The notes under the pieces are model-generated. The model was not told where the DNA came from. It saw only the letters and a list, made by a program, of their open reading frames with translations, and did no database searches. DNA of 64,000 nt, from IMG/VR virus record IMGVR_UViG_3300048591_000147, positions 62,001-126,000 of that record. One strand, given 5' to 3'. The position numbers and the translations under genes are program-made. Below are positions 731 to 62,577 of the stretch, piece after piece; within the stretch, counting starts at the first letter, position 1; each line of letters begins with the position of its first letter.

Positions 731-1258
731 TTAAAAGAATTTCTTGAACCTATCCTTCCATGATGGAGGGGTTGTGCTAGGATCGGATGCTGTCTGAGCT
801 TTAAGAGAGGCAGCAGCTTCTGGTGATGTATTACGAGGTCCAACATTCAATGGAGCCAATGAACCGACATTTCGCCCGTTGCTGTTCTGTTCCATTTCAT
901 AATTATATCGGATATTATCTACGATATCATCGACAAGTTTGCCAGCGGTCTGTAGGTTGCTCATGATACGAGAGGTATTCTTTTTGACAGATTCCTTTCC
1001 AGCTTTGTATTTCTCTAGAGCTTCAGGGTCTTTGGCAAACTTTTCTTTATCCATTAAATAGAATTTGCTTAATTTCTTGACCAGTGCCATTCCACGTCTA
1101 GCGGCTTCCAATCGTGCGACAGCTAAATCAAACTGCTGATCTATGTCCATGCCTTCAGGAAGATCGCCTGTACCCTCGTTGATCTTCTCTAATTCATTCT
1201 GAAGGATTTCAACTTGAGTAGAACTCAAGTTGTCCTGTATCTCTTTAATTAAACTCAT
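731..1258 (-). CDS. hypothetical protein, probably late-expressed
   Basis: 175-aa ORF with AAGGA RBS and GATAAATA late-promoter-like site upstream on the minus strand. Confidence 0.7.
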   Translation of the reverse strand: MSLIKEIQDNLSSTQVEILQNELEKINEGTGDLPEGMDIDQQFDLAVARLEAARRGMALVKKLSKFYLMDKEKFAKDPEALEKYKAGKESVKKNTSRIMSNLQTAGKLVDDIVDNIRYNYEMEQNSNGRNVGSLAPLNVGPRNTSPEAAASLKAQTASDPSTTPPSWKDRFKKFF

Positions 1259-1292
1259 TTATCGATTCCTTAGATTTAATATATTTATCACA

Positions 1293-1910
1293 TTATGGAC
1301 TTATTTCGTCTAGAATAACCTGAGTGCCACGAATCGAAGCGATTCTGTATTTCTTAAAATCGATGGTATAAATCTTGTCGTGGAGAAAGGTGTCGTATTC
1401 GTGAGGAAGGTATTTTTTCAAAAATTTGGCTTTTGACATCCTAACACCTTCAACATAATACAAATATTGTGGTTTCTTCTGATCTGGATACTGAGTTATG
1501 GAAGCTGGGCCAGATATATTATGCTGTTTATGTCTAATCCACCACTCCCGATGAACGATTGAACCATCTTCAGCATAATAAATCACAGCAGGACCGTTTT
1601 CTCTATGTAATTTTCCTGCACGGTGCCAACGCTCAACGTCTGGCTGACCATTTCGATGATATGTTATCATTGCGGGTAAATCATTGCCCCTATGAAGAGC
1701 ACCATCAATGTAATATTCTTCTATTATCTTAAAGTTGGGTGTTGTGTGTACACCAAATCGTTGGACGGCTGGACCTGTTTCACAATGAAATATTTCACGC
1801 TCCGCATCTTTATATTTGTTTGCTTCAGCTAATCGCATTGGGTTATCGTAATAAATGTGCCCAACGAAACAACCATCAATAAATCCAAGGTCTTTGTAAA
1901 TTCTAGCCAT
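1293..1910 (-). CDS. LHRxxGPA-repeat (MORN/YwqK-like) protein
   Basis: Repeated LHRGNDLPAMITY / LHRENGPAVIYY / HNISGPASITQY units. Confidence 0.65.
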   Translation of the reverse strand: MARIYKDLGFIDGCFVGHIYYDNPMRLAEANKYKDAEREIFHCETGPAVQRFGVHTTPNFKIIEEYYIDGALHRGNDLPAMITYHRNGQPDVERWHRAGKLHRENGPAVIYYAEDGSIVHREWWIRHKQHNISGPASITQYPDQKKPQYLYYVEGVRMSKAKFLKKYLPHEYDTFLHDKIYTIDFKKYRIASIRGTQVILDEISP

Positions 1911-14265: not shown

Positions 14266-14343
14266 GGCTCCGTAGCTTAGCGATCTAAAGCGGGTAATTC
14301 TAAACTACTGTCATCCTCGGTTTGAATCCGAGCGGAGCCACCA
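14266..14343 (+). tRNA. tRNA with CUA anticodon (amber-suppressor-like)
   Basis: GGCTCCG/CGGAGCC acceptor, ACCA end, loop TT-CTA-AA, T arm CTCGG-TTTGAAT-CCGAG. Confidence 0.75.
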
Positions 14344-38662: not shown

Positions 38663-38770
38663 GGGAGCGTGGCCAAGTGGTAAGGCAGCAGACTTTTTAA
38701 GTATTTTTACAGTCATTAAGAATACTTAGAAATCTGTTTATCGTGGGTTCGAATCCCACCGCTCCCACCA
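38663..38770 (+). tRNA. tRNA (probably Lys-UUU) with a 33-nt insertion in the anticodon loop
   Basis: Perfect acceptor, D and T arms and CCA; 40 nt between the GCAGA and TCTGT anticodon stem strands. Confidence 0.75.
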
Positions 38771-42602: not shown

Positions 42603-42684
42603 TAAGATGAACAAAGCCTGAATGACCTTCAGGCTTGTTCTTTACTTATAATCAATTATAGTGTAAAATGGGTGCGTGGTCGGA
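42603..42684 (+). repeat. long dispersed element copy (hairpin + promoter + G-rich core)
   Basis: First 34 bp identical to 48535-48568, then TTTACT-N17-TAAAAT-GGGTGCGTGGTCGGA. Confidence 0.9.
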
Positions 42685-42782
42685 ACAATAGTGGGATAAA
42701 TTCCGTCCCACTGAGAAATGTTTTCTGTTCAGCTACCATTCAGTCTAGTGTGATACCATATACTTAACAACTGGAGAACACC

Positions 42783-46637: not shown

Positions 46638-46685
46638 CCGACCACGCACCCATTTTAACATAACTATTCTGAACGATAGCTGAAT
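46638..46685 (-). repeat. dispersed element copy (minus strand)
   Basis: Reverse complement ttcag-ctatcg-ttcag-N11-taaaat-gggtgcgtggtcgg. Confidence 0.88.
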
Positions 46686-47063: not shown

Positions 47064-47939
47064 ATGAGCAAGGTTCATCAGATTCTGACTGACAAAGTGC
47101 TGGCCATGATTGACGGTGGTGTTGCCCCTTGGAAGCGTCCTTGGCGCGCTGCTGGCCGTCCGCGCAACATTCGTGGCACCAACTATCATGGCATCAACTA
47201 TTTCATGCTGTCGATGGTTGCTGAAATGAATGGCTGGTCGAATGTGTGGATGACGTTCAATCAGATCAAGGAAAAGGGTGGCACGATCAAAGAAGATCAG
47301 AAGAAGAATGGAACGTGTGCATACTTCTTCAAGATGCTGGAACGTGAGAATGCCATCACTGGCGATATGGAAAACAGCCACCCGATTTTCCGATTCTTTC
47401 TGGTCTTCAATCTGGATCAGGTTGACGGAATCATCGTCAAAGGGGTGAATGATCAGACTGGCACTGTGCATGCTGAATTGCCCGCTCCGCAGAGCATCGT
47501 GGATGGCTACCAGAATGCGCCTGAGATTCGTTTCGGTGGTGGTGCGGCATACTACCAGCCTGTAACCGATAAGGTCACCATGCCGCTTCTGAGTGCATTC
47601 CATACAGCGGAACAGTACTATGCCACCATGTTCCACGAATTGGCGCACAGCACTGGTCATCTGACTCGCTTGAACCGCAAGGAAATCATGGACCCGGTTG
47701 GATATGCGTCACATGAATACTCGCTTGAAGAATTGGTTGCTGAGCTTACCAGTGTCTACTTGTGTGATGAATGTGGTATCACGAATAATCGCACGCTGGA
47801 AAACTCTGCTGCATACCTTGCAAACTGGTACAGCGCACTGAAGAATGATCCGAAAATGTTCGCCACTGCTGCCGCGCGAGCACAGAAAGCCGCAACGCAT
47901 ATCCTTGGCAAGGTCGAGGATGCTGCGCAAGAGGATTGA
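47064..47939 (+). CDS. ardC: ArdC-like antirestriction / ssDNA-binding protein
   Basis: PWKRPW, Y.GIN, W.TFNQ, FLVFN.DQ and HELAHSTGH...EELVAEL zincin motif. Confidence 0.85.
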   Translation: MSKVHQILTDKVLAMIDGGVAPWKRPWRAAGRPRNIRGTNYHGINYFMLSMVAEMNGWSNVWMTFNQIKEKGGTIKEDQKKNGTCAYFFKMLERENAITGDMENSHPIFRFFLVFNLDQVDGIIVKGVNDQTGTVHAELPAPQSIVDGYQNAPEIRFGGGAAYYQPVTDKVTMPLLSAFHTAEQYYATMFHELAHSTGHLTRLNRKEIMDPVGYASHEYSLEELVAELTSVYLCDECGITNNRTLENSAAYLANWYSALKNDPKMFATAAARAQKAATHILGKVEDAAQED

Positions 47940-48534
47940 TTCAGAATCCATTCATCTAGTGTGTAGTATCATAGCTACACACTAGAGCAAACGGAGAACG
48001 AAATGTCCGATGAACAGGTTCTGGCAGTGCTGGCACGAATGGCTGAAGACGCTGGCGATTATGCGGAAGCTGATCGCCTTCGCGAACCCTCCTACGATCA
48101 ATCAAAGGAAGTGTGATGAACCTTCCCACCAACATCCAGAATTTGATTGCCACTGCCCTCCCGGTTGACCCCGGAAACTACAACAATTCGATTGAAGCAT
48201 ATGACGGTGGTTATCGCGATGCGATGGAATCAATCGCCATGGCGTTGACTGGCACCATTCCAGAAGGATTGTTGTTGGATGCGGTGAATGCTGCACTGGA
48301 CGCATTCGCCAACAATTGTGCTGATGGTGATTTCGAGGATGATGGCCAGCCATCTGAACAGCAAGAATGGCGCGATTACGATCCTGACTGTTAAGCTGGC
48401 ATTCAGGTAGGTAGCGTATAATACAATACATCAACCAAGAGGGGAACGTCATGCAGGAAACAGAAGATCTGTGGGAAGCTGAATGGAACGCTTGGATGGA
48501 ATCGCAGGAAGATGAAGAGTTGGACTGCTGTCTG

Positions 48535-48615
48535 TAAGATGAACAAAGCCTGAATGACCTTCAGGCTTTTTCTTTACTTGTAATCAATTACATGCTAAAA
48601 TGGGTGCGTGGTCGG
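48535..48615 (+). repeat. long dispersed element copy upstream of the tail-fibre-like cassette
   Basis: Near-identical to 42603-42684. Confidence 0.9.
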
Positions 48616-48661
48616 GGAAAACTCCTTTAAGATAAATAGATAGAAAAGGAGTTTTACAAAA

Positions 48662-49213
48662 ATGGCAAATACAAAGATTAGTGCGTTACCTGCTGCGACC
48701 AACCTGACAAGTGCTGAGTTACCTATAGCACAAGGTGGTGTCACTAAGAAGATTTCAGCCGCAGACCTTAACACACATATTCAAACTACGCTTGTTTCTA
48801 CTACTATAAGTCTAGGTGTGGTAGAATTAGCAACAACGGCTGAAGTTAGCGCTGGAACAGACACTGCTCGCGTATTGACTCCAGACACATACAGAAATGC
48901 TATTCCCTATTACATTAGCAGAAGCACATCCTACAATCTAGCGCTTACTGACAGAAACACTGACCAATGGTGTACTGCTGCTCTTACTGCCAACATCCCC
49001 GCAGAGAGTGGTGTAGCATTTGACATTGGCACTTCAATACCATTTCTTCGCATAGGTTCTGGTACTGTTACTATTGACGCCAACGGTGCAGTAACTTTGA
49101 ATGGTGTGCTTGGTGGTTCCTGTACCATACGCACACAATATCAAGGTGCCCTGTTAAAGAAAATCGGCAACGATAATTGGGTGATCAGTGGTGACGTGAG
49201 TGCTGTTGTATGA
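48662..49213 (+). CDS. tail-fibre-like structural protein
   Basis: TKISALPAAT start, GVVELATTAEV..GTDT.R.LTP repeat, Y....L.K...D.W...GD end; GATAAATA at 48631. Confidence 0.7.
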   Translation: MANTKISALPAATNLTSAELPIAQGGVTKKISAADLNTHIQTTLVSTTISLGVVELATTAEVSAGTDTARVLTPDTYRNAIPYYISRSTSYNLALTDRNTDQWCTAALTANIPAESGVAFDIGTSIPFLRIGSGTVTIDANGAVTLNGVLGGSCTIRTQYQGALLKKIGNDNWVISGDVSAVV

Positions 49214-49956
49214 ATAATTCTCAATACTATACTACAAGGCGCAATAAACTTGGTATTTTTATGATGGAGGAATTGTATACTGGTACAAGCACTTCATCTA
49301 TTCCAAATTATGAAGGATATACCCTATCATTCACTACGGCGCCAGCAGTAGGTCAATTGATAGTATTAACCACTCACTCAAGAAATTTCAATGTGGTTGG
49401 TGGTGTTGGTCCTGCGCCAACAATAGGCGGTCAACCTTTCCTATTAGCCGCTAGGGGTGGAACATATGGCGCTATCAGCCCCGGTGCAAGATCATACATG
49501 GCTGAGATATGGTATAGAACTGCAACTGCTGCTGATGCTGCAAATTCGTATACCGTATATTTCTGGGCGGATGGTGTCAATATGCTATCAGCTACAAAAT
49601 TCTCTGGTGGTACATATTGGGGTACACCAGAAGACCCAAACGTAACACCTGATTCAACATATGCTAATAGAGCGGCTACTGGTTCGACTTCTACCATTAT
49701 TGCTGGTGCGACTGGCGTCAATGTGTCTACAGGTGGTTTTGTTATTGCCGCTGGTGCAAGATTCACAAGTACATCCACGCCAACAGTCAACAATTCATTT
49801 TCATTAACATCACAGTCTTATAGTGAAGCAAGTTTTGGCGCGTTCCATGTTGCACGTAGAGATAACTATGACGCTGCGGCAGTCGCACAGAATACGACAT
49901 TCTCCTATAGTGGAAATGACTACATGGCATCTGCAATAGCAGCATTCAATCCTTGA
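49210..49956 (+). CDS. T/A/S/G-rich beta-strand protein, putative virion or receptor-binding component
   Basis: 248 aa with composition typical of fibre domains; ATGA-coupled to the preceding ORF. Confidence 0.6.
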   Translation: MNNSQYYTTRRNKLGIFMMEELYTGTSTSSIPNYEGYTLSFTTAPAVGQLIVLTTHSRNFNVVGGVGPAPTIGGQPFLLAARGGTYGAISPGARSYMAEIWYRTATAADAANSYTVYFWADGVNMLSATKFSGGTYWGTPEDPNVTPDSTYANRAATGSTSTIIAGATGVNVSTGGFVIAAGARFTSTSTPTVNNSFSLTSQSYSEASFGAFHVARRDNYDAAAVAQNTTFSYSGNDYMASAIAAFNP

Positions 49957-50003
49957 CCGACCACGCACCCATTTTAACATACTCATCCTGAATGAAATCT
50001 GAA
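49957..50003 (-). repeat. dispersed element copy (minus strand) abutting the stop codon at 49956
   Basis: TGA followed directly by CCGACCACGCACCC-ATTTTA, then two CTGAA boxes. Confidence 0.9.
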
Positions 50004-50022
50004 CGTAATTTATTGATTACGT

Positions 50023-50217
50023 TCAGAATTTCAATTTGGATTCATAGATAGCTTCTTCAACCTTGGCTGCTTCGGTAGCTTTCTCAAGCGTATACCATTC
50101 CGATTTTGGCTTGATAGGAATATCAAATGCTGAAAACACTCCCCACATATCTTGTTCTTCAAGGTATGCAACGAAGTGATTTGATAGTTGAAACGCCGCT
50201 TTAGATTCTCCACTCAT
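50023..50217 (-). CDS. small hypothetical protein with a ~260-nt structured leader
   Basis: GGAG RBS; TTGCAA-N17-TATAGT promoter at about 50520-50492 (minus strand). Confidence 0.65.
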   Translation of the reverse strand: MSGESKAAFQLSNHFVAYLEEQDMWGVFSAFDIPIKPKSEWYTLEKATEAAKVEEAIYESKLKF

Positions 50218-50609
50218 AATATTCTCCAATAGAATCGCCCCACCCGGTTGACTAGACACGGATGGGGCAGCCCTGTAGCAATATTTATCAAGGGACTTTT
50301 TGTCGAAGGATTCGTCCCAGTCTTTCTACCTTGCAGCCGACTTTAGGGGCGCTGCTAACCTTCCGGCTTTACCGTTACCTATATGAGGGCCAAGTCATGT
50401 CTTAGGTTCTCTCTAATGCGTCCGTAGACTAATTTGATGCTCTGACCATCTCCGTTTCGATGGGGTTGTTGTTACCCCGTCGATGGATTGAACTATAGAC
50501 CCATCAATTGATTATTGCAACGACTATTTTGTAACAAGTTATGTTGCATTTCATTCAGCTATGATTCATGTTCATGCTGTAGAATTGATCATAACAACTG
50601 GAGAGACAA

Positions 50610-50846
50610 ATGAAAAAGATCATGTTGGCCCTGTGTGTGGGCCTGTTGCTTGGCGGATGTGATGCAACCACAACTGAAGTTCATGGCTTTATCCTACCAG
50701 AAGGTCTGAAAGACTGTAAGATCTACCGACTGCGAGATGGCATTAGCCACATCACTGTCACCCGATGCCCGAATTCCTCCACATCCACACAGTATCAGAC
50801 GGGTAAGACTACCAGTAGCTCAACGCTTGTGGAAGATTCTCCGTGA
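50610..50846 (+). CDS. small lipoprotein
   Basis: LGG-C lipobox; TTCAG-type promoter and TAACAACTGGAG leader. Confidence 0.7.
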   Translation: MKKIMLALCVGLLLGGCDATTTEVHGFILPEGLKDCKIYRLRDGISHITVTRCPNSSTSTQYQTGKTTSSSTLVEDSP

Positions 50847-52308: not shown

Positions 52309-53541
52309 GATAAGTGATTGATTCTGTTACAAAATAGTTGTTGACAGCCAAACAATTGTCAGGCATCATAGCACCATACTGAATCGGAACACGATCATGA
52401 ACGAGGGCACAAGCCGAAAGGTGTTGAAACTGGCCGAACAGAATTATGTTGCGCTTTTGCAACATCCTCATGATAATTGGCGCATTCGCAATCAGCGTAC
52501 ATTATGTGATGCTCGTGAACTGGTGTCCATATTGACTGGCGAGACTGGTCAGGAAGTGCAAGATCGTTTCGAGAATGTGCTTTGGGATGTTCATGAGCTT
52601 TGCGATATGTTGAATAGGAAAGTATGATATGAGCGAACCGCTTAAAGATTGGGAAACATTCACCCATACACTATCAACTGGCACCACTGTTGTGGCTGGT
52701 CTTTGCCATGATACTGGCGATTTCGGTGCAGAATTTTCAAAAGATGGTGTAGAAACTCTGAAATTTTCTTTGTCTGATGAAGCGGTAGAAGTGTTGATTC
52801 AGCTTTGGATCAACCTCAAATATGGTAAAGGTATTACCGAAGGCAAATTCTATGATGTTGCATTCGACTTGGTTGAATGGGTGAAACCGAAATGAACATG
52901 ATCAAAGAAACACGTAAAATACCGCTGAACGAATCGAACGAATTATGTCCGATTGCATATATAAAGCCCATTGCTGGGGAATATTTCGATACTGCATCAA
53001 TCGGCTATGAATGGGGCTATGGGCTGGTATTGGTCTGGCAGCGTCCAGAAACCCAAGCCGAAATGGATGCACGTTTGGCAAGGTCTGCAAGGACCAAAGA
53101 GAATACACGCTTGAACATGCTTGAACAAGTGGCTGCAATCGAAAAGCGAATTGCAAAAGATCAACAAAAATTGCAAAACGTGAAGAAAACCATTGCGGAC
53201 CACTATTCCGAGTGATATAATTCATCCATACTGAAATGGAGCAGAACGATGGACCCGGATTTCACAATCAGTGTCAGCGATGCTGCGGTGCATGTGCATT
53301 ATAAACCGTGGACGATGATTTATAGCAATGAGGATTTTGATCGGGTGAGTCGTCTTTCAAGTGATCTTCTTGCTACTGGTAAGCTCAATTATCAGCAATG
53401 CTTGACGCTTGCAAACGTGGCGATCAAGACTGCCAACCAGAATTCTGTGAAGCATGACCCAACCATGAGTCACATGATGATGTTCAGCAACGATTCAGGT
53501 AAGTAGAGTATAATTCATCCATACCAACTAGGGGACAAGTC

Positions 53542-54408
53542 ATGCGAACTGACATTCATCGTAAAGGTGCTATCGTTCCCGCTGATTACAGCTATGTGAT
53601 GAGCTACAGTCTGTCCACAAGTCAGGATGGCTGGCCCGTTCCGTCATACAATGTCAATTGCATCATTGACACGCATCATACCAAGACCACGCATAGTGGC
53701 AACTGCTGCCTGATCGGGATGTTCAGCGATCCCACCAAAAAGTTTGCAAAGCATGGTAGCACTGGTAAGTGCACCATCTGTGGTGCTGCATACGTCTATG
53801 GTGACGTGTGGCAGCATGGTCCCACTGGTGAATACATCCATGTTGGGCACGATTGTGCGGACAAAATGAATTCTCAGGACCGTCGCGCTTTCGAGCATGG
53901 TCGTGTGAAGTACATCAATGGGCAGATCAAGCTGGCACGGTTGGCAAAGTTTTGTGAAGAAAATGAGGGCATGAAGCTTGTGTTCTCCTGTGCTGACAAA
54001 AATCATATCATCGCTGATATGCGTTCCAAGGTCATGGAATGGGGCAACTTGTCCGAAAAGCAGATTGCTTTTGCAAAGAAATTGGCCGATACCATCCTCA
54101 ATCCTGCGCCCACTGAGGACGAACCAGAACCGCTTCTGCTGAAGGATGGTCGTGGGGAATATACTGGTCGCTTCGTAGCATTCAAATCCAGTGAAGGCCC
54201 GTATGGTTACGTCATGAAGGGGTTGTTTATCGTAGTGCAGGATGGTAAGCAAGCCAAGGTCTGGATGACTGTCCCGAGTGGCTATGGCGATGAAAAGAAT
54301 GTGGAAGCCACCATTGTAGTGGCATTGTCCAAGGGTGACAAAGCTGGATTCTACTTCGGGAATCGCCCCAAGCTGTTGAAAGTGCTTGACACCGTAGAAT
54401 GTAATTGA
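53542..54408 (+). CDS. hypothetical protein with Cys/His motifs
   Basis: C.ICG, HVGHDCA and LSEKQIAFAKKL; tandem-TTCAG promoter at 53484. Confidence 0.75.
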   Translation: MRTDIHRKGAIVPADYSYVMSYSLSTSQDGWPVPSYNVNCIIDTHHTKTTHSGNCCLIGMFSDPTKKFAKHGSTGKCTICGAAYVYGDVWQHGPTGEYIHVGHDCADKMNSQDRRAFEHGRVKYINGQIKLARLAKFCEENEGMKLVFSCADKNHIIADMRSKVMEWGNLSEKQIAFAKKLADTILNPAPTEDEPEPLLLKDGRGEYTGRFVAFKSSEGPYGYVMKGLFIVVQDGKQAKVWMTVPSGYGDEKNVEATIVVALSKGDKAGFYFGNRPKLLKVLDTVECN

Positions 54409-54965: not shown

Positions 54966-54986
54966 TAAAATGGGTGCGTGGTCGGA
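54966..54986 (+). repeat. dispersed element copy
   Basis: TTTACA-N17-TAAAAT-GGGTGCGTGGTCGGA. Confidence 0.88.
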
Positions 54987-55073
54987 GGGAGTCGAACCCT
55001 CTAGGTGATCAAGCCTTGTCTCCGTAAGCTGCACATTCAAGTGCTGTGCGAATCAACACACGCCATCTAGCCC
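54985..55073 (-). pseudogene. degenerate class-II tRNA lacking its 3' acceptor strand
   Basis: GGGCTAG start, D-like, anticodon-like (CTTGAAT) and variable arms, GAGGG-TTCGACT-CCCTC T arm, then the repeat element. Confidence 0.5.
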
Positions 55074-55079
55074 ATATAA

Positions 55080-55229
55080 TCAATCAACCTGTTCAATCCT
55101 GACATATGCTTCTTTTTCGTAGTCGTACATTGCGAATGCGTCGTACCGTGGGCCGATCATGATCTTATCATAATCCGCATCTGCTGGCAACATTCTGATC
55201 AACTCAGCCAGACTAAACTCTCTACTCAT
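55080..55229 (-). CDS. small acidic protein (49 aa)
   Basis: MSREFSLAELIRMLPADADYDKIMIGPRYDAFAMYDYEKEAYVRIEQVD; in the minus-strand operon. Confidence 0.55.
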   Translation of the reverse strand: MSREFSLAELIRMLPADADYDKIMIGPRYDAFAMYDYEKEAYVRIEQVD

Positions 55230-61278: not shown

Positions 61279-61727
61279 GGGGTATCCATCTGGGTGATCT
61301 TCCCATTTGGAACCCCATTCAGGTACAGATGTTCGCGGTTCCCCCAACATCACTCTATCAGTCTGTCGATAGAGGTACTTCATAATCATTATTTTTTTAT
61401 ATTCCTAATTTATAGTGGTTCGTCCAGTCAAAGACTGTTACCTTAGTCAGGTCCAAGTCATGTTCTATGCCCTCCATTCTGTCTTTAGTGGGTTCATTTA
61501 TTACATTTTAGGCGAGTATCGCAGACTATGTAAGTTTGATTAGAGGTTAGAAGACACTTTCTCCTTGGTGGGTGTGTGTGTTGCTTTAGTGTGGAGCCAG
61601 TATGACACCATCAAGCTGAACGGTTGCTGAACAAATTGTAATGTAAATCGTTGATTTCGTTACAATTCAGTGCTTGACTGCATAACATAATAGGTCTATT
61701 ATTCAATCATACCAAGTGGAGAACGAC

Positions 61728-62204
61728 ATGCGCAAGAATTACAAGGTTGGATATATCGGACGCAAGCCAGTATTTGTGTCGGTGGAATACGCCAATAACG
61801 CGCTGTCGATTACGGGTGTAGTCAATCCCAATCGCTGCGGCAATTGTGATAGCTGCGGGCAGATTGTCTCATCCCTGCCGGAGATTGACACGTTCACAGG
61901 TGAATGGACGCAAGCGGATATTAATCAACTGTTGTTCTATTGGGAACGCTGGCACCTGAACGATATGCGGGCAGGGTCGCAGGTACAAGAGGACTATTTG
62001 CGCAAGAATCCAGTTAGCGTGCGCTATCCTGAGTCGTATTATGTCAAGGCATCGGACGCACTGGCTGAGGCTGGTATTAACCCTGATGCTGATGGCTACA
62101 AGTATGGCAGCGCGTGGAAGTTTGAAGCTGTACCAGCTCGGGTGATTGCGTGGTTATTCTCTTTTGAGATGGCAGATGATCTGCCAGTAGTGTGGGCTAG
62201 ATGA
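61728..62204 (+). CDS. phage hypothetical protein
   Basis: WERWHLNDMRAG and YKYGSAW motifs; sigma70 promoter and GGAG RBS. Confidence 0.75.
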   Translation: MRKNYKVGYIGRKPVFVSVEYANNALSITGVVNPNRCGNCDSCGQIVSSLPEIDTFTGEWTQADINQLLFYWERWHLNDMRAGSQVQEDYLRKNPVSVRYPESYYVKASDALAEAGINPDADGYKYGSAWKFEAVPARVIAWLFSFEMADDLPVVWAR

Positions 62205-62213
62205 CCAAAACTG

Positions 62214-62245
62214 TTCAGCAATCGTTCAGCTAAGTGATGTATAAT
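62214..62245 (+). promoter_or_regulatory. tandem-TTCAG promoter (representative of about 40 sites)
   Basis: TTCAG-CAATCG-TTCAG-CTAAGTGATG-TATAAT, followed by an A/C-rich leader and AAGGA RBS. Confidence 0.8.
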
Positions 62246-62271
62246 TCAATCATACCAACAAGGAACAGACC

Positions 62272-62517
62272 ATGAACTCCAGCGAACTCAAGCGCAACAT
62301 CGAACGTAACAATCCCGGTAGCCTGTTCTTTTCGCGTGGTGCCATGCAGAATGGCGGTGACACGATGCGCAACTATGGCGTCTGCACTGCAAAGATCATG
62401 ACCCCAGATGGTGAAAAAGAGGTATGGGAATTGTATCGCCGTCAAGCCACCCCACGGGGTTACACTAGCTCAGTGTATTGGGACAAGGCAACATTCAAAG
62501 TGGTCTACAAGGTCTGA
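62272..62517 (+). CDS. small hypothetical protein
   Basis: NPGSLFFSRGAM..GDTMRNY; monocistronic cassette. Confidence 0.75.
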   Translation: MNSSELKRNIERNNPGSLFFSRGAMQNGGDTMRNYGVCTAKIMTPDGEKEVWELYRRQATPRGYTSSVYWDKATFKVVYKV

Positions 62518-62577
62518 TTCAGCTAACGTTCAGGTTCTGAGCGTATAATACATTACATCAACCAAGGGAATGCAGCC

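What the first reader, a model, noticed from the sequence alone, without database searches (positions are those of the whole stretch)
48596..49976. Tail-fibre-like gene pair precisely enclosed by inverted copies of the element
Seen: two late, virion-type ORFs sit isolated among early genes. The left copy ends 3 bp before the RBS-masking hairpin, and the right copy begins at the base immediately after the TGA at 49956. Inference: the sharpest evidence that the element delimits an acquired or exchangeable module, here possibly a host-range or adhesion cassette. The right-hand promoter would also transcribe antisense across it.
Basis: partly seen in the sequence, partly recalled or inferred. Interest (0 to 1): 0.7.

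Follow-up and report, generated by a model that had tools for sequence, protein, structure and literature searches.

The report
Late fibre operon between promoter repeats
In an uncultivated 315-kb jumbo phage, a dispensable two-gene tail-fibre-like operon sits between two facing copies of the phage's repeated promoter cassette and seems to be held silent until late infection by a T4-style hairpin; this is a new variant of known phage regulatory and shuffling devices, not a new kind of mobile element.

Summary
A 24-nt inverted repeat (48592-48615 / 49957-49980) brackets two real genes, and its 20-nt core occurs 12 times in the window against 0 expected.

The core is the -10 box plus 14 downstream bases of about 17 promoters confined to a 64-kb region of small genes. 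Type A copies have a terminator stem-loop and a sigma70-like -35; the left copy is type A. Type B copies have RTTCAG boxes and no -35, and usually face a convergent gene's terminator; the right copy is type B.

ORF1 is a short fibre-like protein. ORF2 is its conserved partner of unknown fold. A T4-type late promoter (ATAAATA) lies in the loop of the hairpin that masks the ribosome-binding site, as in T4 genes e, soc and I-TevI. This explains how late genes can sit among presumed early ones.

Eight further lineages carry the pair at this locus in this orientation.
- The left copy is present in all seven whose upstream flank is readable except one.
- The right copy is present in three lineages in all. 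G000's exact abutment reflects loss of a 27-nt terminator.
- One relative has an empty site and two lack the whole 5-kb block.
- Synteny breaks fall at core edges.

No recombinase gene and no inverted form was found. The model is PeSL-like shuffling, not an inverted-repeat-bounded mobile or invertible cassette.

The parts
48545..48569 (.). Stem-loop (10 bp, terminator-like on both strands) immediately upstream of the left promoter; the 'SL' of the type A cassette
   Evidence: the same hairpin precedes most of the 26 type A copies
48573..48601 (+). Sigma70-like promoter of the left copy: -35 TTTACT, 17-nt spacer, TG-extended -10 TAAAAT
   Evidence: type A consensus TTTACa-N17-TAAAAT
48596..48615 (+). 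Left copy of the invariant 20-nt core (-10 box plus 14 downstream bases)
48618..48655 (+). Leader hairpin (arms 48618-48628 and 48644-48655) that pairs the Shine-Dalgarno AAGGAG (48646-48651)
   Evidence: the full leader folds at -13.7 kcal/mol in G000 and -14.7 to -19.8 in 7 relatives. In L069 the sequence differs but the SD and AUG are still masked.
48632..48638 (+). T4-type late promoter core ATAAATA in the hairpin loop, 24 nt before the ATG
   Evidence: 70 of 137 genomic ATAAATA lie 10-45 nt upstream of a same-strand ORF start. A gp55 homologue is present. The motif is conserved in all 8 relatives with this leader.
48662..49213 (+). ORF1, 183 aa, short fibre-like protein (N-terminal motif, collar-like GVVELAT..TP motif, C-terminal domain of minor tail proteins)
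49210..49956 (+). ORF2, 248 aa, conserved partner of ORF1 with unknown fold; start overlaps the ORF1 stop (ATGA)
49957..49976 (-). Right, inverted copy of the 20-nt core, abutting ORF2's TGA
   Evidence: orthologous copy in L073/L074
49977..50004 (-). Upstream part of the type B promoter: TG-extended -10 context and two RTTCAG boxes (49988-49993, 49999-50004 on the minus strand); no -35
   Evidence: 85% identical to G001 79616-79677
49998..50027 (.). Stem-loop (12-13 bp) that overlaps the distal RTTCAG box and m78's stop codon. It is terminator-like on both strands: the likely 3' end of the ORF1-ORF2 mRNA and the 'SL' of the type B cassette.
   Evidence: same hairpin with a flipped loop in L073/74 and in an X1 strain
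50023..50259 (-). Convergent small ORF (m78) that marks the right border of the pair in all relatives; it has its own ATAAATA at 50282-50288 (-)

Best explanation
The interval is a two-gene accessory operon: a short, probably trimeric, fibre-like protein (ORF1) and its conserved partner (ORF2). It lies in the hyperplastic small-gene region of a jumbo myovirus distantly related to Xanthomonas phage XacN1.

The two 'copies of the element' are two of about 17 promoters that share an invariant 20-nt core (-10 TAAAAT plus GGGTGCGTGGTCGG).
- The left copy is a PeSL-like unit: a terminator stem-loop, a sigma70-type -35 and -10, and the core.
- The right copy is a PmSL-like unit on the other strand: a stem-loop, RTTCAG boxes in place of a -35, a -10 and the core. 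This kind normally faces the terminator of a convergent unit.

Timing (inferred by analogy with T4):
- Transcripts from the left promoter carry the whole leader. An 11-bp hairpin in it hides the Shine-Dalgarno sequence, so little protein is made.
- Late in infection, gp55-directed RNA polymerase starts at the ATAAATA promoter in the hairpin loop.
- That mRNA lacks the 5' arm and is translated.

Evolution:
- The promoter cassettes act as portable homology at which modules are joined, lost or exchanged.
- The pair is an old, dispensable resident of this locus.
- The exact abutment of the right copy to the TGA arose when the 27-nt terminator between them was lost.
- A side effect is that the right promoter can now run antisense through the operon.

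Shown: the anatomy, its conservation, the presence/absence states and the breakpoints. Inferred: promoter activity, temporal classes, translational masking, virion location and recombination as the cause of the breakpoints.
For: Promoter nature and distribution of the core:
- Searches give 75 distinct instances in G000, relatives and metagenome contigs.
- 26 have a TT[GT]AC -35 at 16-18 nt. 37 have RTTCAG 9-12 nt upstream of the -10.
- 19 of 37 type B copies, against 2 of 26 type A copies, are followed 16-35 nt later by a perfect GC hairpin.

Late promoter:
- 70 of 137 ATAAATA lie 10-45 nt upstream of a same-strand ORF start. The other A5T2 permutations give 2-23%; the 23% belongs to the overlapping TAAATAA.
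- Tail sheath and the giant ORF are among the genes served.
- A gp55 homologue is present: phrog_234 E 3e-26 and T4 gp55 E 2e-7.

Hairpin:
- Folding energy is -13.7 to -19.8 kcal/mol with the 5' arm and 0.0 without it, in 8 lineages. L069 reaches the same result with a different sequence.
- The T4 precedent is genes e, soc, 49 and I-TevI (PMC3014915).

Real, co-inherited genes:
- dN/dS is 0.15 for ORF1 and 0.10 for ORF2 against L033.
- ORF1 and ORF2 homologues are adjacent in every context found.

Fibre nature of ORF1:
- Tail PHROGs, best 1.4e-08. The C-terminus matches minor tail proteins.
- Predicted-structure look-alikes are DUF2793, Mtd_N and phage tail fibre C-terminal families.
- A paralogue lies beside the 3112-aa ORF of the tail module.
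- ORF1x3 + ORF2 complex: ipSAE 0.47 against a best control of 0.00, tool verdict 'weak support'. The mark was reached by 58 of 80 solved complexes and 2 of 110 mismatched pairs. Runs agree in >=68% of contacts and the partner's pLDDT is >=83.

States of the right end:
- terminator plus type B copy: L073/74
- copy only: G000 (type B) and L069/70 (class unreadable)
- terminator only: L033/34, L035/42, L036, L072 (L071's contig ends inside the terminator)

Empty site: L038.

Breakpoints at core edges:
- G001 against L073, L036 and G000 at the left copy.
- w46638 against G001 82859.
- A wastewater contig joins the upstream flank of the left copy to the downstream flank of the direct copy at 42664, with the switch inside the core.

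PeSL/PmSL literature: PMC4122927.
Against: - There are no transcript or protein data. The host is unknown, so 'early', 'middle' and 'late' rest on motif analogy.
- The 14 invariant bases downstream of the -10 are not explained by ordinary sigma70 promoter function. The core may do something else as well.
- Many type B copies would make only a ~45-60-nt RNA ending at a terminator, which is odd for a plain promoter.
- Sharp breaks at a promoter edge are expected in part because indels of whole genes end in intergenic DNA. I did not test this against a null of all intergenic regions.
- The wastewater contig junction could be another strain's gene order rather than a recombination product.
- ORF2's function is unknown. 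The AF2 monomer models were poor (pLDDT about 50).
- The patchy distribution of the right copy needs several losses or a re-acquisition, and I cannot tell which.
Confidence: 0.62

Rival explanations
1. The pair plus its two inverted core copies is a discrete mobile cassette (inverted-repeat-bounded, transposon- or MITE-like) that inserts as a unit.
For: - Inverted copies sit exactly at or near both ends in G000 and L073/74.
- The pair is present or absent among relatives.
- Other cassettes are also enclosed by convergent copies: G001 80637/79659 and 84383/82859.
Against: - In every lineage where the flanks can be read, the pair lies at the same locus, between the o93 side and m78.
- Five lineages lack the right copy and one lacks the left.
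- I saw no target-site duplication next to the arms on reading.
- There is no transposase and no serine or tyrosine recombinase in the genome.
- The 'ends' are ordinary members of two promoter classes that occur 17 times in this genome.
- The L038 deletion ends inside m78, not at a right-hand copy.
Confidence: 0.07
2. The segment is an invertible host-range switch. Recombination between the inverted cores flips the operon so that it is read from the left (type A) or the right (type B) promoter.
For: - The geometry is symmetrical: both promoters face inward and one abuts the leader while the other abuts the stop codon.
- T4-like phages recombine at short homologies (PMC4122927).
- The loop of the neighbouring palindrome is flipped between strains.
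Against: - The pair has the same orientation in every lineage where a flank can be read, including L073/74, which have both copies.
- No strand-switch joint appears in contigs of 7 runs, though contigs are weak evidence here.
- No invertase or integrase gene is present.
- The repeat is only 20-24 bp.
- Both genes are complete inside the segment, unlike the Mu G or P1 C design, in which a constant 5' part lies outside.
Confidence: 0.03
3. The right copy is kept at this spot for a function of its own. It may be a convergent promoter that silences the late operon early in infection by antisense RNA or polymerase collision. With its terminator, it may be an 'end-of-unit' mark that stops read-through. 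This rival is compatible with the main explanation but adds selection for the inverted copy.
For: - An inverted copy lies 0, 8 or 27 nt after the ORF2 stop in three lineages that are 42-47% diverged in ORF2: G000, L069/70 and L073/74.
- 19 of 37 type B copies face a terminator at a fixed distance.
- In G000 no terminator-like site lies on the minus strand between 49957 and 48569.
Against: - Five lineages do without it.
- In L073/74 the terminator would stop the antisense RNA after about 35 nt, so antisense silencing cannot be the conserved role.
- There are no RNA data.
Confidence: 0.2
4. ORF1 and ORF2 are not virion parts. They could be late-made proteins that act on the cell surface, for example by receptor masking or superinfection exclusion, in keeping with the neighbouring lipoprotein genes.
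For: - The pair lies outside the structural module, next to a DUF4884/phrog_902 lipoprotein gene and another ORF that looks like it has a signal peptide.
- It is dispensable in relatives.
Against: - Neither ORF has an evident signal peptide on inspection of the translations.
- ORF1 shares its N-terminal motif and C-terminal domain with a small ORF in the tail module.
- ORF1 resembles fibre families by sequence and by predicted structure.
- The late promoter is the same as that of the structural genes.
Confidence: 0.15

Closest known systems
PeSL and PmSL cassettes of T4-like phages (Arbiol et al. 2010, PMC2839356; Comeau et al. 2014, PMC4122927)
   Same: - Composite terminator stem-loop plus a strong sigma70-like promoter (TTTACW-N17-TAWWAT).
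- A second class with an activator box in place of the -35.
- Many near-identical copies concentrated in hyperplastic regions of small ORFs.
- Copies lie at indel and replacement borders between relatives.
   Different: - Both classes here share an invariant 14-nt stretch downstream of the -10, which is not part of the published PeSL description.
- The upstream box is RTTCAG, not the TGCTT Mot box.
- About half of the box-type copies point at a terminator and have no gene behind them.
- The phage belongs to the XacN1-like jumbo group, and XacN1 and RAS14 themselves lack the core.
- Mini-circles were not shown here.
Leader hairpins with an internal late promoter in T4 genes e, soc, 49 and I-TevI (review PMC3014915)
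   Same: - The SD/AUG is sequestered in longer upstream-initiated transcripts.
- A TATAAATA-type late promoter lies just upstream of the RBS, so the late mRNA lacks the 5' strand of the helix.
- The design lets a late-function gene sit in a region read early.
   Different: - The promoter is NATAAATA (GATAAATA here) and lies in the loop.
- The regulated genes are a fibre-like pair.
- Everything here is predicted, not measured.
Invertible tail-fibre segments (Mu G, P1 C, with Gin/Cin invertases; established knowledge, recalled rather than read here)
   Same: Short inverted repeats flank tail-fibre genes that determine host range.
   Different: - No invertase gene is present.
- Both genes are complete and co-oriented inside the segment.
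- Only one orientation is seen in all lineages.
- The repeats are promoters that occur 17 times in the genome.
Morons of lambdoid phages (autonomous promoter-gene-terminator units; established knowledge, recalled rather than read here)
   Same: A dispensable gene unit with its own promoter and terminator, inserted between unrelated genes.
   Different: - Expressed by the lytic late programme, not from a prophage.
- Bounded by family-wide repeated promoter cassettes.

Membership tests
PeSL (promoter-early stem-loop) cassette | Stem-loop terminator directly upstream of a sigma70-like -35/-10 promoter with ~17-nt spacing | tested here: met
   Left copy: stem-loop 48545-48569, then TTTACT-17-TAAAAT at 48573-48601. 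26 type A instances have the same layout.
PeSL (promoter-early stem-loop) cassette | Many conserved copies clustered in a hyperplastic region of small, variable ORFs | tested here: met
   17 copies, all within 64 kb of a 315-kb genome. The region is a mosaic against G001.
PeSL (promoter-early stem-loop) cassette | Copies lie at insertion, deletion or replacement borders between related phages | tested here: met
   Breaks at core edges at w48615, w46638 and in L038. Not tested against a null of all intergenic regions.
PeSL (promoter-early stem-loop) cassette | Recombination between direct copies yields deletions and mini-circles | tested here: inconclusive
   One wastewater contig joins w48376-48615 to the sequence that follows the direct copy at w42664. 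This is a circle or duplication junction, or another strain's gene order.
PeSL (promoter-early stem-loop) cassette | Promoter is active early with unmodified host RNA polymerase | not testable with these tools
   No host and no strand- or time-resolved RNA data. Runs X1-X4 are labelled RNA-Seq but look like DNA.
PmSL (promoter-middle stem-loop) cassette | -10 box plus a Mot box (TGCTT) at about -30 in place of the -35, with a MotA-type activator | tested here: not met
   Type B has a -10 and an upstream box at the right distance, but the box is RTTCAG, not TGCTT. A MotA homologue was not searched for. Type B works like a PmSL but is not a member by the sequence definition.
T4-type late promoter with inhibitory leader hairpin (genes e, soc, 49, I-TevI) | TATAAATA-type motif close upstream of the RBS, used genome-wide for late genes | tested here: met
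   ATAAATA at 48632-48638. 70 of 137 genomic copies lie 10-45 nt upstream of ORF starts, against 2-23% for the other permutations.
T4-type late promoter with inhibitory leader hairpin (genes e, soc, 49, I-TevI) | Phage-encoded gp55-type late sigma factor | tested here: met
   G000 217596-217961 (-): phrog_234 E 3.3e-26 and T4 gp55 E 2.3e-7.
T4-type late promoter with inhibitory leader hairpin (genes e, soc, 49, I-TevI) | SD/AUG paired in upstream-initiated transcripts; the late transcript lacks the 5' strand | tested here: met
   By prediction only. Folding energy is -13.7 to -19.8 kcal/mol against 0.0 in 8 lineages, with a compensated variant in L069.
Invertible tail-fibre segment (Gin/Cin/Hin type) | Site-specific serine invertase encoded nearby | tested here: not met
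   No PF00239 or PF00589 match anywhere in the genome; the controls rang.
Invertible tail-fibre segment (Gin/Cin/Hin type) | Both orientations occur in populations or relatives | tested here: not met
   One orientation wherever a flank can be read. No strand-switch joints in contigs; long reads were not available.
Phage tail fibre / receptor-binding protein (ORF1) | Sequence or fold similarity to known fibre domains, and a trimeric fibre architecture | tested here: inconclusive
   Weak tail PHROG hits, best 1.4e-08. tblastn to C-termini of minor tail proteins, 31-39% identity. Look-alikes by predicted structure at TM 0.5-0.68. The trimer folds with pLDDT 93-94 in the complex job. No Pfam hit and no virion data.

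The most novel reading that the evidence does not exclude
The invariant 20-nt core may be more than a promoter part. It could be a two-way punctuation mark of this phage clade.
- In one orientation it starts a unit.
- Inverted and next to a terminator, it closes a unit and yields a ~45-60-nt RNA with a fixed 5' end.
- At the DNA level it is the preferred crossover point at which modules such as this fibre pair are lost, gained or re-ordered.

The fixed transcribed bases could be a tag read by a phage factor. In G000, where the terminator is lost, the early transcript of the operon would carry complementary 5' and 3' ends.
Probability: 0.12. Interest if true: 0.7.

Novelty: new variant of a known kind. 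Interest (0 to 1): 0.45.

Why it matters
- It extends two devices first described in T4-like coliphages and vibriophages to an uncultivated clade of XacN1-related jumbo phages from wastewater and fresh water. The devices are promoter/terminator cassettes that double as recombination points, and hairpin-gated late translation.
- It gives a concrete, testable account of how a host-range-type gene pair is kept silent in an early region and how it comes and goes between strains.
- The invariant 14 bases after the -10, and the many promoter-to-terminator mini-units, are not explained by what is known. They are the part worth an experiment.

Tried and rejected
- blastn of the locus against 50,697 phage records gave no match.
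- ORF2 had no hit in Pfam, PHROGs or phage tblastn. A profile of the ORF2 family against the 303-aa ORF that follows another small fibre-like gene (G000 1388-2299) showed no relation.
- AF2 monomer models of ORF1 and ORF2 had pLDDT of about 50, so I ran no fold search on them.
- Rfam gave nothing in 48300-50700.
- I considered that the core derives from a tRNA 5' end, because it looks like an acceptor stem plus the start of a D arm. No tRNA call of ARAGORN or Rfam coincides with any core copy, so I dropped the idea.
- A contig joint 48620->50084 seen at 85% likeness looked like the empty-site form. It did not recur at 90%, so I do not use it.
- The DNA-level comparison of G000 and G001 was too mosaic for a genome-wide breakpoint statistic. 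I used protein synteny and three individual junctions instead.
- XacN1 and RAS14 were searched for the core and have none.
- I built no tree to date gain and loss of the right copy. ORF1 and ORF2 identities disagree between lineages, which points to recombination inside the pair.
Full report
GENOME. The window is bases 62,001-126,000 of a 314,956-bp viral record with direct terminal repeats and 39% G+C. It encodes a T4-superfamily core: DNA polymerase, tail sheath, baseplate wedge and hub, RNA ligase and NrdA. It also has a gp55-type late sigma factor. The tail sheath is 56-58% identical to those of Xanthomonas phage XacN1, Xoo-sp13 and Stenotrophomonas phages CM1 and RAS14. No deposited phage matches the locus at the DNA level. 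Near-identical pieces occur in wastewater and freshwater metagenomes.

OBSERVATION. The inverted repeat is real: 48592-48615 against 49957-49980, 24 nt, 96% complementary. Its 20-nt core TAAAATGGGTGCGTGGTCGG has 12 matches in the window against 0 expected. The genome has 17, all inside a 64-kb stretch. ORF1 (48662-49213) and ORF2 (49210-49956) lie between the copies. ORF2's TGA ends at 49956 and the right core begins at 49957. Contigs from independent wastewater runs cross this junction without indels.

WHAT THE ELEMENT IS. I collected 75 distinct instances from this genome, two related viral contigs (G001, 306,759 bp and complete; G002, a 129,621-bp fragment) and 32 metagenome loci.
- Type A (26 instances) has a GC hairpin, then TTTACa or TTGACa, 17 nt, TAAAAT and the core. 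The left copy is of this kind, and a consensus scan calls it a sigma70-type promoter with a TG-extended -10.
- Type B (37 instances) has no -35. Instead it has CATTCAG-N5-GTTCAG ending 10-11 nt before the -10. The right copy is of this kind.
- 19 of 37 type B copies, against 2 of 26 type A copies, are followed 16-35 nt after the core by a perfect GC hairpin, the bidirectional terminator of a convergent gene.

The usual punctuation of a unit is therefore: type A copy, genes, terminator, inverted type B copy. G000 has four such convergent pairs. G001 has its own, around unrelated cargo. Similarity among copies stops sharply at the 3' end of the core. The cultured relatives XacN1 and RAS14 lack the core.

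THE GENES. Both ORFs are under purifying selection: dN/dS against L033 is 0.15 for ORF1 and 0.10 for ORF2, with dS 0.74-1.05.

ORF1 evidence:
- Weak tail-fibre PHROG hits.
- A C-terminal domain shared with minor tail proteins of Gordonia, Brevundimonas and other phages.
- Fibre-type look-alikes by predicted structure: DUF2793, Mtd_N and a phage tail fibre C-terminal family.
- A 152-aa paralogue just downstream of the 3112-aa ORF in the tail module.
- A third small ORF (G000 834-1370) shares the N-terminal motif. All three have ATAAATA 24-31 nt upstream.

ORF2 has no family. Its only homologues in two very large protein libraries are eight proteins, and each sits directly after an ORF1 homologue.

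A complex job (three ORF1 chains and one ORF2 chain) scored ipSAE 0.47 against a best control of 0.00. The tool calls this 'weak support': the mark was reached by 58 of 80 solved complexes and 2 of 110 mismatched pairs. The runs agree in at least 68% of contacts, the partner's pLDDT is at least 83, and the ORF1 chains score 93-94.

TIMING DEVICE. ATAAATA at 48632-48638 lies in the loop of the hairpin whose 3' arm contains the Shine-Dalgarno sequence.
- Genome-wide, 70 of 137 ATAAATA lie 10-45 nt upstream of a same-strand ORF start. The other twenty A5T2 permutations give 2-23%, and the 23% belongs to the overlapping TAAATAA.
- The motif precedes the sheath gene, the giant ORF and many other genes of the structural regions.
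- Only 7 of the 83 gene-proximal copies lie in the window.
- With the full leader the hairpin folds at -13.7 kcal/mol here and -14.7 to -19.8 in seven relatives. An RNA starting 7 nt after ATAAATA has no structure.
- L069 has a different leader sequence that still pairs the SD and AUG and still carries ATAAATA in the 5' half.

This is the design described for T4 genes e, soc, 49 and I-TevI (PMC3014915). It explains how a late operon can sit behind an early-type promoter. That the type A promoter is early is an inference from its sigma70 form.

RELATIVES. The pair occurs in eight further lineages: L033/34, L035/L042, L036, L069/70, L071, L072 and L073/74. Wherever the flanks are readable it lies at this locus, between the side holding the 93-aa ORF (window 48113-48394) and the convergent small ORF m78, in one orientation. 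ORF2 identity runs from 88% down to about 37%.
- The left type A copy with the hairpin leader is present in every lineage whose upstream flank is readable, except L069.
- The right end has three states. L073/74 have stop codon, 27-nt terminator, then the inverted type B copy with the same upstream palindrome as G000. G000 has the type B copy only, and L069/70 have a copy of unreadable class 8 nt after the stop. L033/34, L035/42, L036 and L072 have the terminator only, and L071's contig ends inside it.
- G000's 'precise enclosure' is thus the L073 arrangement minus the terminator.
- L038 keeps ArdC, the 37-aa ORF, the 93-aa ORF and a type A copy. About 45 nt after the core it runs into m78, whose last codons are replaced. 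This is a deletion of the pair with one end at the core.
- G001 and G002 lack the pair. In G001 the homologue of the ~100-aa ORF that precedes the left copy in L036 and L073 is followed by the same type A cassette, and then directly by the homologue of window ORF 53542-54408. The 5.1-kb block is therefore missing, with its left border at the cassette.
- A second sharp break lies at the core edge of the copy at 46638.
- G001's 158-aa cassette gene is at another place in G000, window 61716-62204.
- One wastewater contig carries window 48376-48615 (3 mismatches) and continues after the core with the 30 bases that follow the direct copy at 42664. Beyond the stem-loop, promoter and core the two loci are unrelated, and the switch lies inside the core, which is shorter than the assembler's word.

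WHAT IT IS NOT. No serine or tyrosine recombinase is encoded. No inverted form or strand-switch joint was seen, though contigs are weak evidence for that. I saw no target duplication at the arms on reading. The copies are ordinary promoters of the region. I therefore reject a Gin-type switch and an inverted-repeat-bounded mobile element as the main reading.

COMPARISON AND NOVELTY.
- The closest known systems are the PeSL and PmSL cassettes of T4-like phages (PMC4122927) and the T4 late-promoter-in-hairpin leaders (PMC3014915).
- Features that differ: the 14 invariant bases after the -10 shared by two promoter classes, an RTTCAG box instead of the Mot box, the frequent promoter-to-terminator mini-units, and the phage lineage.
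- These differences make it a new variant of a known kind.
- What remains unexplained is why the core is invariant while synonymous sites of neighbouring genes are near saturation, and what the type B mini-units do.

Noticed in passing
window 50235-50520: A non-coding stretch between m78 and the lipoprotein gene is more conserved than the flanking ORFs in 7 relatives. RNAalifold predicts 32 pairs, 4 of them with compensatory double changes. There is no Rfam match, and nhmmer finds a single copy in the genome. It is a candidate structured RNA.
   Followed up: partly
window 48376-48615 joined to 42684-42713 (contigs of runs X2/X4): A wastewater contig links the upstream flank of the left copy to the downstream flank of the direct type A copy at 42664, switching inside the 20-nt core. 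This is the junction expected of a 5.9-kb circle or tandem duplication, or it is another strain's gene order.
   Followed up: partly
window 49998-50027: The loop of this perfect palindrome is flipped between G000 and L073/L074 and one X1 strain, while the stems are unchanged.
   Followed up: no
window 38663-38767 and 14266-14343: Rfam calls a 105-nt tRNA, probably with an intron, that ARAGORN misses. ARAGORN calls a CUA-anticodon tRNA (a possible amber suppressor) that Rfam does not list at gathering score.
   Followed up: no
G000 834-1370 (+), G000 190780-191238 (-), window 48662-49213: Three small fibre-like ORFs share an N-terminal motif (xSKISxLPaa..L.g.E.lP), and each has an ATAAATA late promoter 24-31 nt upstream. 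They may dock at a common site on the virion.
   Followed up: partly
window 54986-55080 (minus strand); also L042 and L051: Directly downstream of the type A copy at 54966 lies the reverse complement of a tRNA T-arm (GGTTCGAnTCC type). Two relatives have the same feature at their copies. Neither tRNA tool calls a gene there, so it may be a tRNA remnant or an unusual tRNA-like RNA on the opposite strand.
   Followed up: no
window 48400-48425, 53493-53516, 62210-62250, 62517-62550: A further promoter class, RTTCAG-N10-TATAAT without the 14-nt core, precedes many small genes. The motif CAACTATTTTGTAACA recurs upstream of RTTCAG-box promoters.
   Followed up: no
window 47064-47939: An ArdC-like anti-restriction protein (ArdcN plus a zincin-like metallopeptidase domain) is conserved in all relatives, just upstream of the variable block.
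   Followed up: partly
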